A stretch of DNA of 63,187 bases, counting the filler, from Octopus bimaculoides (taxonomy: Eukaryota): NCBI RefSeq assembly GCF_001194135.2. It is 6 parts of 6 records of this genome, joined end to end, with 100 filler letters (N's around TTAATTAATTAA, not from the genome) between each part and the next. Parts side by side here need not be neighbours in the genome. Positions count along the whole stretch, not along the records: positions 61,150 to 63,187 come from NW_026431500.1; 5 more parts are not named here. The stretch is one strand, 5' to 3'. Positions 8,815-63,187 of the stretch are shown piece by piece. The stretch's first letter is position 1. Every line of letters starts with the position of its first letter. The position numbers and the translations under genes are program-made. The notes under the pieces were generated by a model that worked only from the letters and a program-made list of their open reading frames with translations, had not been told where the DNA came from and searched no databases.

Positions 8815-9160
8815 CAAATACAAAGAGATAAATCTGGACGAGCATCCTCGTATTATCGAAAAAGACAAGATATCCTAATTTTACACAGATATTGATGTAA
8901 GCAGACAATAATGTCGCAGAAAAGAACGATAAAAATTATATAACTGAATACATGGCAATAGAAACATCGAAGATATCTAATATATACTCAAGATATATCC
9001 TTATAATTATAGAAACGTTGGGATCAGTGAAGCAAAAGACGAATGAGAATCGAAGAACTTTCAGATAAGCCTTCCATGTGTAAAGCTCAGTGGAAGTAGC
9101 ACTCCTTAGGAAGTGTCCATGTTATGTGAAAGATATGATCAGAAACACTTTAAGATGAAT
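8815..9160 (+). mobile_element. Degenerate REL-endonuclease C-terminus of an R4/Dong-like element
   Basis: Remnants IIETLGSVK and VALLGSVHVM (cf. ALLGTARILRKVL). Confidence 0.55.
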
Positions 9161-9290
9161 AGCTTATAACTAGAAACCCATTCTACCACGAAATTATTTC
9201 GGAAGATTATATTACCTTAAACACAAAAACATGATTGTAGTAAGGACAACCATTCAAATTATGATGATGATGACGGCGACGACGACGATG

Positions 9291-9347
<57 letters not shown>

Positions 9348-9514
9348 CTACTGAATAATAATAATAATAATAATCTTAAAGCGGTGGAAAAGATTGGTAT
9401 CAGTCTTGCTATGAAATGTGCTCATTTTTAAGGAAACTATGACTGCCTGAGGTACTTGTGACTTGACACATGACTAAACACGCCCGTGCTGTTTCCACAT
9501 ACACTAAATGACGA

Positions 9515-9583
<69 letters not shown>
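9291..9583. repeat. (TAA)n arrays interrupted by LINE 3' ends
   Basis: Arrays at about 9291-9345, 9353-9373 and 9516-9583. Confidence 0.9.
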
Positions 9584-9584
<1 letters not shown>

Positions 9585-9708
9585 TTCTTCGCAGGGTTCT
9601 TTGTGCACGGCCAGTAAACATATGTCACCTTAGTCTGATCTCTGTGGACAACTGACACTTTCCATTATACCCAGCAAAATAAACTGAGTTTTCATCAAAT
9701 AATAATAA
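9584..9708 (+). mobile_element. Short 3' end of a Dong-like element within (TAA)n
   Basis: Begins ILRRVL; about 100 nt similar to 10473-10580 (CCAGTAAAC...ACACTTTCCATTATACCCAGCAAAATAA); followed by AATAATAA. Confidence 0.65.
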
Positions 9709-9711
9709 CAG

Positions 9712-10600
9712 TTACAAAATGTTCAACAAGATCACTTCATATTTGCTTTGCATGGATAATCTGAAATTATATGCAAAAAATTACAATGAACTGAAAGATC
9801 TCTATTAACTGCGAAAAAAGTCAGTGATGACATCAATATGGAATTTGATCTTGAGAAGTCTGCAAAAGCTTTGTTCAAACATGGTAAACTGACAGCTAAC
9901 ACTTTAGACCCAAAATGATCCTGATACATTTAGCAAGGACCTAGATCAAAAAGGCTTTTATAAGTATCTTGGGATACACAAAGGAAAAAGGATTCAACAC
10001 GGATCAATGAAAGAGAAGATGAGGAAAGAGTATTATAGACGTGTCAGAATGGTCCTGAATACTGAGAATAGAATCGCAGCTATAAAATTCCCCGGCGGAA
10101 CCAGTTGTCCAGTATAACCATAAAAGAACTGGTGTGAACACCATCCAGAGCCAGTTACTAAGGGAGATAATGCAATGATCCAGTGTGATCACCTGACCAG
10201 ACATTGGAAACCGGATATTGTTGTGGTGAATAAAAAAGAAAGAACATGCTTGATCATCGACGTAATATGTCCCGGTGACAAGAGGATCAAAGAGAAGAAA
10301 ACTGAATAACGACGACAATTTGAAGTGGGAAATACGGAGGCTGTGGTCAATGAGAAGTGTAGACGGGATATTAATAGTAATTCGCGCATTCAACTACCAA
10401 CATGGCTGAAAAAGATTGGTACAAATGTAAAGGTAGAACACCTAGACAAATCAGCATTGCTTGGAACTGCAAGAATTCTTCGCAAAGTTCTTGAAGCACG
10501 ACCAGTAAACAAGTGTCACTTAAGTCTCCTGGCTCCCCTGGAGAGCTAACACTTTCCATTATACCCAGCAAAATAAGCAATTTTGAGTAAGAAGCTAAGT
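9712..10600 (+). mobile_element. R4/Dong-clade element, RT C-terminal half and REL domain, internally deleted
   Basis: YLLCMDNLKLYAK, SDDINMEFDLEKSAK, YKYLGIH, MKEKMRKEYYRRVRMVL, KPDIVVVNKKERTCLIIDV, LDKSALLGTARILRKVLE. Confidence 0.85.
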
Positions 10601-61149: not shown

Positions 61150-62810
61150 CTATGGTGATATTCTGATATATATTGTGGTGTATGTGGTTCTGCAGTGGCA
61201 GGAAAACCCCGTTGTTTTTGTGCCCGTCGTAAAAAAGAAGCTTCCAGTTCATCTAGTACTGGTCTATATAGGTCTGATAATAAACGGTCTTCCTCAGATT
61301 CAAATCGCTGTACATATCGTGGTCTTGCAGTGGGAGGAGAGCGCCGTTGTTTATGTGCCCGTTGTAAGAAATAATCGTCCAGTTCACTTTGTAATGTACT
61401 ATTTTGCAGTGAACGTGAACGGTCTTGATAGTCTGGTACATATCGTGAACTCTGTGGTCGTGCAGTGGGGGGAAAGAGCCGTTGTTTTGGTGCCCGTTGT
61501 AAGAAATAATCTTCCATTTCATCTAGTGATGGTCTAGATTGCTGTGAACGTGAACGGCCTTGCTCGGATATATGTGGCTCTACATTCATGTGATAGTCTG
61601 ATGCATATCTTGAAGGGGGTTGTGTAGTGAAGTGACGGTGCCGTTGTTTTCGTACTCCTCGTGATCTAGCAAGTTCCAGTGAATCTCGTAAATTATCATA
61701 TCGCTGTAAACGTGATTGGTCTTGCTTGGATATATGTGGCTCTACATTAGTGTGATAGCCTGATACATATGTTGGAGGTCGTCTATCAACATTCATTGCA
61801 GTTACGTATGTGGGAGATGGCACTACATTGTGATGATATCTTGATACATATTGTGAATTATCGCGAACACGATTGGATCTTCTGTCTGCTGAATTATTAT
61901 TATTCTCTAAATACGAAACACTCCGACACCTGAGGGGCGCTGAAACATAGCTTTCAGAAATTCTTCTAGGAGGATAAATTGTTTTTCTTTCAGATCTGTT
62001 ATATGACATGTCTACCACCGAAATTCTGTATTCACTTGACGATATACGGTGAGGATATGGTTTTGGTATACTGAGGTGTTGTTCGTGTGTTGTGAAATTT
62101 TGGCATTCCTCAAATGGTCTTCTAGTTGACGAAATTCCATCATTATTTTCTGGTTGTTCCTTCCTTGAATGTTTAGGAATACAGAACGAGCATGTTAAAT
62201 TTGTCTTACTATTTTGAATCATTTCCGTGGCTGTATTAATGCGATGTGGGTTTATTCTTGATATCGAAGATATTTTTCCTCCTTTGATTATGCAGCTTTT
62301 GTTCGCTGCAATATTTTCCTGGTCTTCCTTTGGTAATGAGTTACCTAATTCTGCGCTTCTCTTGTTCAATTTAACCAGATGGTTGTCAGGGCAGACATCC
62401 TTTTCTCCATTCAGTGTCTTACATTCCAATTTGTTGTTTACATACACGTTCCTATCGTCTGCTACTTCACATACACATCTCTTAGTTTTCTCGTTTTTTG
62501 AATAGTCATGTTTTGCTGTTTCATCAACATCGTTTATCTGGTCATTGTTTTGACCTTCCTTAACACCTATTTGAATCATTTCCATCACATCACCAATATG
62601 ATTCCCAGTATTATTTTCACGATCGTCGTCTTGAGAATCAATATGTCCTGTATTTTCTTCTGTAAAATCCTCGCATTCATTCAGTTCTGTAGATTTGTGT
62701 AATCCCCCATTCAGAACATCTAGATATTGGGAATGGTCAGCCATTTTCACAGTTTCGGAACAGAGGTTCTCATAACACTTCGAAAAAACATCATTCTCTG
62801 TGGTAGTCAT
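61150..62810 (-). CDS. Uncharacterised protein (>=553 aa, 3'-partial): acidic disordered N-terminus, then R/S/Y-rich tandem repeats
   Basis: 1661 nt stop-free and non-microsatellite. First ATG at 62810; the frame is open to 62864 with a possible acceptor TTTCAG at 62851-62846. Codon-preserving internal repeats. No transposon motif recognised. Confidence 0.85.
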
Positions 62811-62924
62811 TCTGGTCACCTCAAATTGACGCTCAATGAAGAGAACTGAAACTAAATGATTTAATCATGATTTACTTTTAACTATGACGTCATCGGTGAT
62901 TGTGACTGTCATTTTGGCATCGTG

Positions 62925-62943
62925 TAGTAGTCGTAGTAGACGT

Positions 62944-63009
<66 letters not shown>

Positions 63010-63025
63010 NNNNNNNNNNAGACGT

Positions 63026-63115
<90 letters not shown>
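62925..63115. repeat. (GTA)n/(GCA)n microsatellite
   Basis: Seen directly in the sequence. Confidence 0.95.
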
Positions 63116-63116
<1 letters not shown>

Positions 63117-63187
63117 ACATCGCTAATCAAACCCTAATTCTTTCTACCTCCCAGGCTCAAAAGAATCACTGATGGCGACAGCAGCAA

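What the first reader, a model, noticed from the sequence alone, without database searches (positions are those of the whole stretch)
61150..62810. Orphan-like repeat protein with a novel ~42-55-aa unit
After an acidic N/D/E-rich N-terminus and an S/R-rich linker come at least four units: YVSGYHTNVEPHISKQ..., YASDYHMNVEPHISEQGRSRSQQSRPSLDEMEDYFLQRAPKQRLFPPTARP, ...ELDDYFLQRAHKQRRSPPTARP and ...LDELEASFLRRAQKQRGFPATAEP, with a fifth entering the gap. Each unit has a short amphipathic acidic-then-basic motif (DE[LM]ExxFLxRAxKQR) in Tyr/Arg/Ser-rich disorder. I recognise no family. Inference: a lineage-specific multivalent scaffold or condensate protein. It is encoded in one large, CpG-rich exon, consistent with tissue-restricted expression.
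Basis: partly seen in the sequence, partly recalled or inferred. Interest (0 to 1): 0.7.

Follow-up and report, generated by a model that had tools for sequence, protein, structure and literature searches.

The report
Octopus-only disordered repeat-protein gene family
This is the promoter and first 553 codons of a real gene from an undescribed, octopus-restricted, tandemly duplicated family of fully disordered repeat proteins; it is a genuine lineage-specific novelty, but its function is still unknown.

Summary
A 553-codon open frame on the minus strand (ATG at 62810) runs off the piece's edge at 61150. It encodes an acidic N-terminus, an S/R/Y-rich linker and a tandem array: one 27-aa unit, four full units of 54, 55, 42 and 48 aa, and the start of another. 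The gene is not a lone orphan. It belongs to an Octopus-only family with at least 10 intact copies in O. vulgaris, O. sinensis and O. bimaculoides, all labelled uncharacterized or hypothetical apart from one composition-based SRRM2-like name. Where DNA was examined, the copies are uninterrupted ORFs in tandem and inverted clusters. No Pfam or PDB match was found, and an exhaustive profile search of 1.84 billion proteins returned only family members. It is not a transposon ORF. AlphaFold predicts disorder throughout (pLDDT about 37). Amino-acid constraint is weak (dN/dS 0.54-0.86), but reading frames are kept open far beyond the neutral expectation. A compact promoter with an invariant TGACGTCA (CRE) site is better conserved than synonymous sites. 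"CpG-rich" is overstated: o/e is 0.86, which is simply undepleted. The scaffold/condensate idea is plausible but untested, and expression could not be examined.

The parts
61150..62810 (-). Coding sequence, first 553 codons (ATG 62810-62808). The C-terminal remainder (further units and the family's basic tail ending ...KRIN) lies beyond the piece's edge.
   Evidence: Relatives are 432-798 aa uninterrupted ORFs with the same start context.
62481..62810 (-). Acidic N/D/E-rich N-terminal block, aa 1-110 (net charge -17, pI 4.3)
   Evidence: The acidic block is present in all close relatives (-15 to -20).
62454..62498 (-). Family signature motif K-x-E-K...C-E-V-A-D-D, aa 105-119. This is the only run invariant in all nine aligned family members.
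62061..62480 (-). Middle region, aa 111-250, the best-conserved part among close relatives (CKTLNG, IKGGKI, INTATE). It is predicted disordered.
61851..62060 (-). S/R/Y-rich basic linker, aa 251-320, with RRISES and RCRSVSY (RRxS and RxRxxS consensus sites of basophilic kinases) and the NNNNSA run that ends the conserved N-terminal region
61770..61850 (-). Short-type unit (27 aa, aa 321-347: Y-motif plus ...VDRRPPT). It is homologous to the 27-aa units of the O. vulgaris and O. sinensis copies.
61608..61769 (-). Full unit 1 (54 aa, aa 348-401). It carries the ancestral helix core YDNLRDSLELARSRGV.
61443..61607 (-). Full unit 2 (55 aa, aa 402-456), with the derived core LDEMEDYFLQRAPKQR
61317..61442 (-). 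Full unit 3 (42 aa, aa 457-498), with a truncated Y-motif and core LDDYFLQRAHKQR
61173..61316 (-). Full unit 4 (48 aa, aa 499-546), with core LDELEASFLRRAQKQR. It holds the only element that AlphaFold models above pLDDT 50 (helix 506-533, about 63).
61152..61172 (-). Start of the next unit (YISEYHH), cut by the piece's edge
62811..62935 (-). Conserved proximal promoter / 5' leader (about 125 nt). It is 73-87% identical to seven other copies, and better conserved than synonymous sites in the most distant comparison.
62885..62892 (.). Palindromic TGACGTCA (CRE/ATF-type site), 75-82 nt upstream of the ATG. It is invariant in all 10 copies examined, within an invariant GTGACGTCA.
   Evidence: 0.01 expected by chance
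62844..62849 (-). Candidate initiator TCAGTT (TCATTT in six of the other nine copies examined, degraded in the three distant ones), 34-39 nt upstream of the ATG. Inferred, not shown.
   Evidence: Sequence. The match to the arthropod-type Inr consensus TCA[G/T]T[C/T] is from my own knowledge.
62924..63116 (.). Trinucleotide microsatellite ((CTA)n(CTG)n on the coding strand), interrupted by a 10-N assembly gap at 63010-63019. A microsatellite sits at the same place in all seven close copies and in P0009, and as a short imperfect remnant in P0006 and P0007, with CTA, ATA or CTG units.
63117..63187 (-). Far-upstream segment, 82-91% identical to the equivalent segment of four other copies

Best explanation
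WHAT IT IS (shown; about 0.9). The piece holds the promoter and the first 553 codons of a genuine protein-coding gene. It belongs to an undescribed gene family known only from the genus Octopus. Family members are single-coding-exon genes amplified by segmental tandem and inverted duplication; in O. vulgaris they form two clusters on one chromosome. The full architecture has five parts: an acidic N-terminal block; a mid region with an invariant CEVADD motif; an S/R/Y-rich basic linker; a variable array of modular units, each made of a Tyr/His motif (YV[SP]DYHxNVEP) and a short charge-polarised helical core ((Y)SxLRDSLELAxxR and derivatives); and a basic C-terminal tail. The tail is missing here only because the piece ends. 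The protein has no signal peptide, no TM segment and no recognisable domain, and it is predicted disordered almost throughout. HOW IT MOST LIKELY WORKS (inferred; about 0.35). It is an intracellular, intrinsically disordered, multivalent protein. The repeat array presents the same two short linear motifs several times over, so it could bind several copies of a partner or cross-link partners. The acidic head (net -17) and basic body (+18 here, +42 to +51 in full-length close relatives) form a block polyampholyte that could self-associate electrostatically. The RRxS and RxRxxS sites in the linker offer a switch by basophilic kinases. Selection appears to act on being translated, on composition and on motif presence, not on exact residues. 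That would explain near-neutral amino-acid change, open frames and rapid turnover of units. Transcription is probably driven by a compact, strongly conserved promoter whose core is a full palindromic CRE, which suggests control by a CREB/ATF-type bZIP factor.
For: Real gene. Under neutral substitution at the observed 9% divergence only 0.15% of simulated 1659-nt frames stay open, and 0% of 2394-nt frames. Yet the window and all nine other copies examined at DNA level are open over 388-927 codons. dN/dS is 0.62-0.86 at shallow depth and 0.54-0.75 at dS 0.42-0.80, with pS>pN at z up to 3.6. The promoter is 81% identical between the window and P0009, where synonymous sites are about 59% identical. 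TGACGTCA is invariant in 10/10 copies against 0.01 expected by chance. Family and restriction. One search returned 5 hits, all Octopus. The exhaustive profile search of 1.84e9 representatives returned 6 proteins, all from the family, and all are O. vulgaris, O. sinensis or O. bimaculoides records. Clusters and single exons are shown. The duplicated unit is about 3.7 kb including the promoter, and a 97.8% inverted repeat lies between a head-to-head pair. No known family. Pfam gave 0 hits, and PDB gave nothing by sequence or profile. Disorder. pLDDT is 37.6 for the whole protein (6-sequence alignment) and 36.8 for the N-terminal region (9 sequences), and the only element above 50 is helix 506-533. 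Mean hydropathy is -1.16 and the maximum 19-residue hydropathy is 0.31. Modular, family-wide units. There are 50 units in 11 proteins with a clear two-part consensus. Unit number differs even between the near-identical O. vulgaris and O. sinensis orthologues (798 vs 771 aa, one 27-aa unit). Charge blocks and kinase-type sites are shown.
Against: No expression, localisation or interaction data could be obtained, and no paper or supplement mentions any member. The alignments used for AlphaFold are shallow (6 and 9 close sequences), so low confidence is weaker evidence of disorder than it would be with a deep alignment. The acid/base block pattern is not conserved in the distant paralogues (P0006: -8/-28; P0009: -33/+6), so it cannot be the family's common mechanism. 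Amino-acid constraint is weak and substitutions are spread evenly over codon positions, so pairwise tests at shallow depth cannot exclude neutrality of the residues themselves. Gene conversion among copies may inflate apparent conservation of both the promoter and the N-terminus. The CRE assignment is a consensus match, and factor binding is not shown.
Confidence: 0.5

Rival explanations
1. This is a germline-expressed (for example post-meiotic testis), rapidly evolving ampliconic gene family. It would act in sperm chromatin or cytoskeleton, or in genetic conflict, and not as a general scaffold. This rival concerns biological context and does not exclude a multivalent-IDP mechanism.
For: The genes are lineage-restricted and intronless, and they are amplified in tandem and in a near-perfect palindrome (97.8% arms). 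dN/dS is high at 0.54-0.86. Repeat number changes between sister species. The product is basic, Arg/Ser-rich and disordered. A full CRE lies within 100 nt of the ATG. From my own knowledge, this combination recalls mammalian CREM-dependent intronless spermatid genes and ampliconic testis families.
Against: There are no expression data. CRE sites also drive neuronal and endocrine genes. Arg content (about 15% in the repeats) is far below that of protamine-like proteins. The analogy is drawn from mammals and flies, not molluscs.
Confidence: 0.15
2. This is a nuclear SR-like RNA-processing or speckle protein, as the NCBI name 'serine/arginine repetitive matrix protein 2-like' given to one paralogue (P0008) suggests.
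For: The linker and repeats are S/R-rich. P0008 carries that automatic name. The protein is disordered and basic.
Against: There is no RS domain. Only 20 RS/SR dipeptides occur in 552 positions, at most 8 in any 50 residues, and the longest alternating run is 4 residues. There is no cwf21, PWI or RRM domain. The name is compositional and applies to a paralogue with different repeats.
Confidence: 0.07
3. This is a non-functional or selfish sequence: a transposon ORF (ORF1-like), a satellite-derived ORF or a decaying pseudogene copy that happens to be open.
For: It is multi-copy and intronless, amino-acid change is near-neutral with an even codon-position spectrum, and TE fragments lie nearby.
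Against: All copies lie in two local clusters on one chromosome and are not dispersed. The duplicated unit has no terminal repeats and no adjacent RT or transposase. The nearby TE pieces are isolated Tc1 HTH and zf-RVT fragments at orthologous intergenic positions. There is no Transposase_22, CCHC or coiled-coil signature. Open frames are maintained far beyond the neutral expectation. dN/dS is significantly below 1 at depth, and the promoter is conserved.
Confidence: 0.04
4. This is a secreted structural or biomaterial protein, like the Tyr/His-rich cephalopod sucker-ring or beak proteins.
For: The repeats contain Tyr and His, the gene is cephalopod-restricted, and the architecture is modular.
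Against: There is no signal peptide or hydrophobic segment anywhere: the N-terminal 30 residues have mean hydropathy -0.58 and the maximum 19-residue value is 0.31. Gly is 2.9%, with no GGY-type modules.
Confidence: 0.02

Closest known systems
Uncharacterized Octopus proteins: O. vulgaris CAI9723197-CAI9723200, CAI9723204, CAI9722905/6; O. sinensis LOC118763368 (XP_036358764.1) and XP_036359032.1; O. bimaculoides LOC106872223 (XP_014774617.1)
   Same: These are true homologues. The N-terminal 310 aa are 41-85% identical to the window, with the same start context, the same CRE promoter and the same unit types; the basic tail is seen only in the relatives, because the window is cut before it.
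   Different: None is the window's own protein (best whole-protein identity is 55-71%). The window's units 2-4 carry a derived core (DE[LM]ExxFLxRAxKQR) not seen in any of them. The window is about equally distant (dS about 0.09) from copies b, c and d of O. vulgaris/O. sinensis, so it comes from another Octopus species or an unannotated paralogue.
Reflectins (cephalopod-restricted, intronless, tandemly clustered, disordered, condensate-forming proteins; the properties are from my own knowledge)
   Same: The genomic style is the same (lineage-restricted, single coding exon, tandem cluster), and the product is an intracellular disordered repeat protein.
   Different: There is no reflectin motif ([MF]D-x5-MD-x5-MD), Met is 1.6% where reflectins are Met-rich, and there is no sequence similarity. 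This is an analogy of kind only.
SRRM2 / RS-domain proteins
   Same: They share S/R-rich, basic, disordered sequence, and one paralogue is automatically named SRRM2-like.
   Different: There are no RS dipeptide tracts and no cwf21 or PWI domain.
CCDC85 family (PF10226), listed for paralogue P0001
   Same: A short helical stretch of each P0001 unit scores weakly against the first 39 of 192 profile positions.
   Different: The whole-protein score of 24.7 bits is a sum over repeats, and no single stretch passes. The window protein gives no hit at E<=10.

Membership tests
Octopus CEVADD/LRDSLELA repeat-protein family (undescribed; defined here) | N-terminal region of about 310 aa homologous to the family profile, including the invariant K-x-EK...CEVADD motif | tested here: met
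   Identity is 41-85% over 313 aa, and CEVADD is invariant in 9/9 sequences. The profile recovers only family members among 1.84e9 proteins.
Octopus CEVADD/LRDSLELA repeat-protein family (undescribed; defined here) | Array of modular units (Y-motif YV.DYHxNVEP and/or helix core SxLRDSLELA) | tested here: met
   The window has 4 significant units (E 1e-13 to 3e-27) among 50 units in 11 proteins.
Octopus CEVADD/LRDSLELA repeat-protein family (undescribed; defined here) | Single uninterrupted coding exon preceded by the conserved CRE-containing promoter | tested here: met
   553 codons are open from the conserved ATG, and TGACGTCA lies at -75 to -82, as in all 10 copies.
Octopus CEVADD/LRDSLELA repeat-protein family (undescribed; defined here) | Conserved basic C-terminal tail (...TW[AD]PDTS...KRIN) | not testable with these tools
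   The piece ends at 61150, inside the repeat array. The tail is seen in P0001, P0002 and P0004 and in the uninterrupted ORFs Os_b, Os_c and Os_d.
CCDC85 (PF10226) | Match to the Pfam profile above the gathering score through a real domain hit | tested here: not met
   The window gives 0 Pfam hits at E<=10. The hit in P0001 has 0 stretches that pass individually and covers 36 of 192 positions.
RS-domain / SRRM2-like proteins | Extended RS/SR dipeptide tracts plus a cwf21 or PWI domain | tested here: not met
   20 RS/SR dipeptides occur in 552 positions, the longest alternating run is 4 residues, and there is no domain.
Reflectin | Repeated [MF]D-x5-MD-x5-MD-x3/4 motifs and Met/Tyr/Arg/Asn-rich composition | tested here: not met
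   There is no motif match and Met is 1.6%.
Retrotransposon ORF1 / transposon-encoded protein | Known ORF1 or transposase domain, an adjacent RT/EN or transposase ORF within the repeated unit, and dispersed copies | tested here: not met
   There are no Pfam hits and no CCHC knuckle. The repeated unit of about 3.7 kb holds only this ORF. Nearby TE fragments are isolated and lie at orthologous positions. The copies are confined to two clusters on one chromosome. A genome-wide copy count was not possible.
Secreted cephalopod structural proteins (suckerin / beak-protein type) | N-terminal signal peptide and Gly/Tyr/His-rich modules | tested here: not met
   There is no hydrophobic N-terminus or segment. 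Gly is 2.9%, with no GGY-type motifs.

The most novel reading that the evidence does not exclude
The family is an octopus-specific cell-biological invention: a set of CREB/ATF-controlled (cAMP-, Ca2+- or hormone-responsive) genes encoding block-polyampholyte, multivalent disordered proteins that build a lineage-specific condensate or granule in neurons or germ cells. Rapid turnover of repeat units would tune valency between species.
Probability: 0.1. Interest if true: 0.7.

Novelty: new variant of a known kind. Interest (0 to 1): 0.35.

Why it matters
Cephalopod novelties are often credited to lineage-specific gene families, yet few such families beyond the reflectins have been dissected. This one is clean and tractable. 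It has at least 10 intact, intronless, clustered genes. A roughly 125-nt promoter with an invariant CRE is under stronger constraint than the coding sequence. The product appears fully disordered, and its repeat valency changes even between sister species. If it is expressed in a specific tissue, it offers a compact system for studying how a young disordered repeat protein is born, amplified and regulated. The short promoter could also serve as a candidate cell-type- or signal-specific driver for the transgenic cephalopod tools now emerging. As things stand, it is an uncharacterised lineage-restricted family with no demonstrated function, which is common in animal genomes.

Tried and rejected
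(1) Pfam on the window protein and on nine relatives gave nothing real. The CCDC85, COMM_HN, Invasin_D4 and GTF2I hits are sub-threshold or are sums over repeats.

(2) PDB sequence and profile searches with the whole protein, the N-terminal profile and the C-terminal module profile gave only E of about 1 noise.

(3) Two of the three large word-indexed protein searches, on the C-terminal module as a single unit and as an alignment, returned nothing. They did not even recover the proteins the query came from, so they are uninformative rather than negative.

(4) Fold search was not run, because both AlphaFold models have pLDDT about 37 and would give meaningless matches.

(5) Rfam found no RNA family in the piece.

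(6) Literature and supplement searches for every accession and LOC identifier, and for cephalopod lineage-specific tandem families, found no mention.

(7) Splice acceptor upstream of the ATG: the window's TTTCAG is TTTCAT in the other six close copies, so it was rejected as a conserved acceptor and reinterpreted as a possible initiator.

(8) Lateral amphipathicity of the motif was rejected.

(9) The TE ORF1, RS-domain, reflectin and secreted structural protein readings were rejected.

(10) The species of origin could not be determined with the collections available.
Full report
**1. What is in the piece**

The usable piece is window 61150-63187. A long open frame lies on the minus strand. Its ATG is at 62810-62808, there is an in-frame TGA 12 nt upstream, and 553 sense codons run to the left edge of the piece at 61150, so the C-terminus is cut off.

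- Residues 1-110 are N/D/E-rich, with net charge -17 and pI 4.3.
- Residues 251-340 hold 17.8% Ser, 14.4% Arg and 10% Tyr.
- The remainder is basic.

The repeat is real:
- At DNA level, Tandem Repeats Finder reports a period of 135 nt (score 362). The repeat finder gives four copies spaced 135, 135 and 162 nt, all multiples of three.
- At protein level, the units are aa 321-347 (27 aa), 348-401 (54), 402-456 (55), 457-498 (42), 499-546 (48) and 547-553 (cut).
- The summed pairwise unit score is 558, against 217 +/- 14.5 in shuffles, giving z = 23.5.

**2. Not an orphan: an Octopus-only family**

- The first large protein search returned only five proteins, all from Octopus (O. vulgaris, O. sinensis, O. 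bimaculoides) and all unnamed.
- An exhaustive HMMER search of 1.84 billion representative proteins, using a profile of the N-terminal 312 positions, found six proteins. All belong to the family and four were new (P0006-P0009). By their records these four are again from O. vulgaris or O. sinensis.
- No member is identical to the window's protein. Identity is 55-71% overall and 41-85% over the N-terminal 313 aa.
- Pfam gives no hit at E<=10. The 'CCDC85' domain precomputed for P0001 is a sum of weak matches over its repeats, with no stretch passing on its own.
- PDB sequence and profile searches give only noise.

**3. Genomic organisation**

- In O. vulgaris all members lie on chromosome OX597818.1. 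One sub-cluster is at about 51.6 Mb (P0007, P0006). The other is at about 93.93-93.99 Mb (consecutive gene models CAI9723197-CAI9723204, including P0004, the 597-aa P0010, P0001, P0002, a 1514-aa gene and P0009). A class-V aminotransferase gene bounds it.
- In O. sinensis a 51-kb locus holds four intact copies of 432, 597, 771 and 643 aa, in both orientations. It also holds a 1388-aa ORF with very divergent units of about 110 aa.
- Every copy examined at DNA level is one uninterrupted ORF.
- The duplicated unit is about 3.7 kb, running from about 180 nt upstream of the ATG to about 1.7-2 kb downstream of the stop.
- One head-to-head pair is separated by inverted arms that are 97.8% identical.
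- The only transposon-like ORFs nearby are isolated Tc1/mariner HTH and zf-RVT fragments. They sit at orthologous intergenic positions and are not part of the repeated unit.

This is segmental tandem and inverted duplication, not transposition.

**4. Architecture of the protein family**

Alignment shows five parts:
- an acidic head;
- a mid region whose only run invariant in all nine aligned members is K-x-EK...C-E-V-A-D-D (window aa 105-119);
- an S/R/Y-rich linker ending in NNNNSA;
- a variable array of units;
- a basic tail ending ...KRIN, which is beyond the piece's edge in the window's copy.

A profile built from the window's four full units and iterated locally finds 50 units in 11 family proteins. 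The consensus is YV.DYHINVEP..SK...SRS..YS.L.DSLELARS....R...ST.QP, which has two conserved sub-elements: a Tyr/His motif and a helical core.

- The core LRDSLELA is the most widespread element. It forms 29-30-aa units in O. bimaculoides P0005 and O. sinensis P0008.
- The window's first full unit still carries it, as an exact 13-mer LRDSLELARSRGV shared with P0008.
- Unit number changes quickly. The O. vulgaris and O. sinensis orthologues P0001 and Os_c (dS 0.006) differ by one 27-aa unit, and P0001 contains two identical consecutive 54-aa units.
- More distant paralogues replace this array with a different C-terminal module of about 100 aa (...TWDPDTSRWSRDF...SGSCFSDY...LNRxWxxAFY...PEMPxxxQCxF). 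The close relatives' tail keeps only its TWAPDTSF core.

**5. Is it under selection?**

- Amino-acid constraint is weak. dN/dS is 0.62-0.86 for the N-terminal region at dS 0.05-0.18, and substitutions are spread evenly over codon positions, for example 22/25/20.
- At greater depth (dS 0.42-0.80) dN/dS is 0.54-0.75 and pS exceeds pN with z up to 3.6. Purifying selection is therefore weak but statistically real.
- The strongest evidence comes from frame maintenance. Under neutral substitution at 9% divergence only 0.15% of simulated 1659-nt frames stay open, and none of 2000 simulated 2394-nt frames do. Yet all ten copies are open.
- The proximal promoter is 81% identical between the window and P0009, where synonymous sites are only about 59% identical.

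Transcription itself could not be tested.

**6. Promoter**

- The roughly 125 nt upstream of the ATG align across all copies.
- The block GTGACGTCA is invariant in 10 of 10 copies, and TTGATGACGTCATAGTT is invariant in the seven close copies.
- The palindrome TGACGTCA lies at window 62885-62892, 75-82 nt upstream of the ATG, with 0.01 occurrences expected by chance. It is the full consensus cAMP-response element bound by CREB/ATF bZIP factors (established knowledge).
- A TCAGTT (TCATTT in six of the other nine copies examined, degraded in the three distant ones) at -34 to -39 resembles an initiator. This is inference.
- A trinucleotide microsatellite lies just upstream in all seven close copies and in P0009, and as a short remnant in P0006 and P0007, although its unit varies between CTA, ATA and CTG.

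**7. Structure and physical character**

- AlphaFold2 gives mean pLDDT 37.6 for the 553 residues (6-sequence alignment). The only element above 50 is a helix at 506-533, which is the motif in the last full unit.
- The N-terminal 313 residues, run with a 9-sequence alignment, give pLDDT 36.8 and no secondary structure.
- The alignments are shallow, so this is supportive evidence and not proof.
- The sequence is very hydrophilic (mean Kyte-Doolittle -1.16) with no hydrophobic segment (maximum 0.31 over 19 residues). It therefore has no signal peptide and no membrane span.
- The helical motifs have hydrophobic moments of 0.20-0.28, reached by 47-58% of shuffles. They are charge-polarised along their length but not laterally amphipathic.
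- The protein is a block polyampholyte: -17 in the head and +18 in the body here, and -18 to -20 against +42 to +51 in the three full-length close relatives tallied (P0001, P0002, Os_b). This pattern is not kept in the distant paralogues.

**8. CpG**

- The ORF has GC 39.4% and CpG o/e 0.86.
- Family coding sequences range from 0.83 to 1.13, against 0.65-0.89 in the surrounding non-genic octopus DNA.
- 'CpG-rich' is therefore too strong, and 'not depleted' is correct.
- In O. bimaculoides, 5mC marks the bodies of highly and broadly expressed genes, while unmethylated genes are silent or variably expressed across tissues (PMC9476566).
- Undepleted CpG is thus compatible with restricted expression, but only indirectly.

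**9. Interpretation**

Shown: this is a real, selectively maintained gene. It belongs to an undescribed Octopus-restricted family of intronless, clustered genes, and its product has no known domain and is predicted disordered.

Inferred (about 0.35): it acts as an intracellular multivalent disordered protein.
- Its reiterated Tyr/His motifs and helical cores would bind several partners or cross-link them.
- Electrostatic self-association between the acidic head and the basic array is possible.
- Regulation through the RRxS and RxRxxS sites of the linker is possible.
- Transcription would be under a CREB/ATF-type factor.

Rivals:
- a germline ampliconic, fast-evolving family (0.15);
- an SR-like nuclear protein (0.07; the RS-domain test failed);
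- a non-functional or TE-derived ORF (0.04; argued against);
- a secreted structural protein (0.02; there is no signal peptide).

**10. Novelty and score**

All relatives are public records labelled 'uncharacterized', 'hypothetical' or, in one case, a composition-based 'SRRM2-like' name. No paper or supplement in the library mentions them.

The sequence family is undescribed. The kind it belongs to, a taxonomically restricted, tandemly amplified, disordered repeat-protein family, is familiar, and no function has been demonstrated. I rate it a new variant of a known kind, with interest 0.35.

The most attractive feature for follow-up is the very compact, deeply conserved CRE promoter, paired with a coding region that evolves almost freely.

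Noticed in passing
window 62924-63116 (gap 63010-63019): The 10-N gap sits inside the (GTA)n(GCA)n microsatellite and is flanked by near-identical sequence on both sides (AGACGTAGCAGCAGC...GTAGTAGTA). This looks like an assembly or scaffolding duplication within a microsatellite, not a real tandem copy.
   Followed up: partly
window 62924-63116; L001, L002, L003, L004 upstream of each family ATG: A trinucleotide microsatellite lies about 100-130 nt upstream of the ATG in the close copies and in P0009, and as a short imperfect remnant in P0006 and P0007. The repeat unit differs between copies (CTA, ATA, CTG). Its persistence at one position through the family's history is unexplained.
   Followed up: partly
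L002 10001-40951 (O. sinensis LOC118763368 isoform X2, P0003): The 484-aa gene model leaves the ORF near codon 390 and joins exons up to 30 kb downstream, across other family members. The uninterrupted ORF at L002 10001-11794 encodes 597 aa with the family's KRIN tail and matches the 597-aa O. vulgaris protein P0010. The model is probably mis-joined, or it is a read-through isoform.
   Followed up: partly
L003 3324 and 10001 (O. vulgaris P0007, P0006): The annotated start codons look displaced. In P0007 the family's ancestral ATG lies 66 nt upstream, in frame. In P0006 the ancestral ATG has become TTG and a downstream ATG is used.
   Followed up: partly
L002 25237-26706 and 27052-28518: Inverted arms 97.8% identical lie between the head-to-head copies c and d. 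This palindromic arrangement could promote gene conversion or rearrangement.
   Followed up: no
L002 24345-25031 (minus) and the orthologous place in L001 (about 9000-9800): An insertion of about 900 nt carrying a zf-RVT (reverse-transcriptase zinc-binding) fragment separates the proximal promoter of copy c/P0001 from the far-upstream conserved segment. It is present in both O. sinensis and O. vulgaris.
   Followed up: partly
L002 40521-45027: A promoter-like fragment (82% identical to the window's ATG region) is followed by a 1388-aa ORF made of about 110-aa units of the family's other C-terminal module. The usual N-terminal region seems to be missing. A 1514-aa gene at the equivalent place in O. 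vulgaris (L004 1-3904) is probably its orthologue.
   Followed up: partly
window 61175-61537 (+ strand): A 120-aa ORF antisense to the repeat array is itself repetitive (…PVVFVPVV…). It is a by-product of the sense-strand repeats, and I found no evidence that it is a gene.
   Followed up: no
tool behaviour: The word-indexed protein search did not return P0006-P0009 even when queried with their own sequence, although the collection holds them. Negative results from that tool for this family should not be read as absence.
   Followed up: yes
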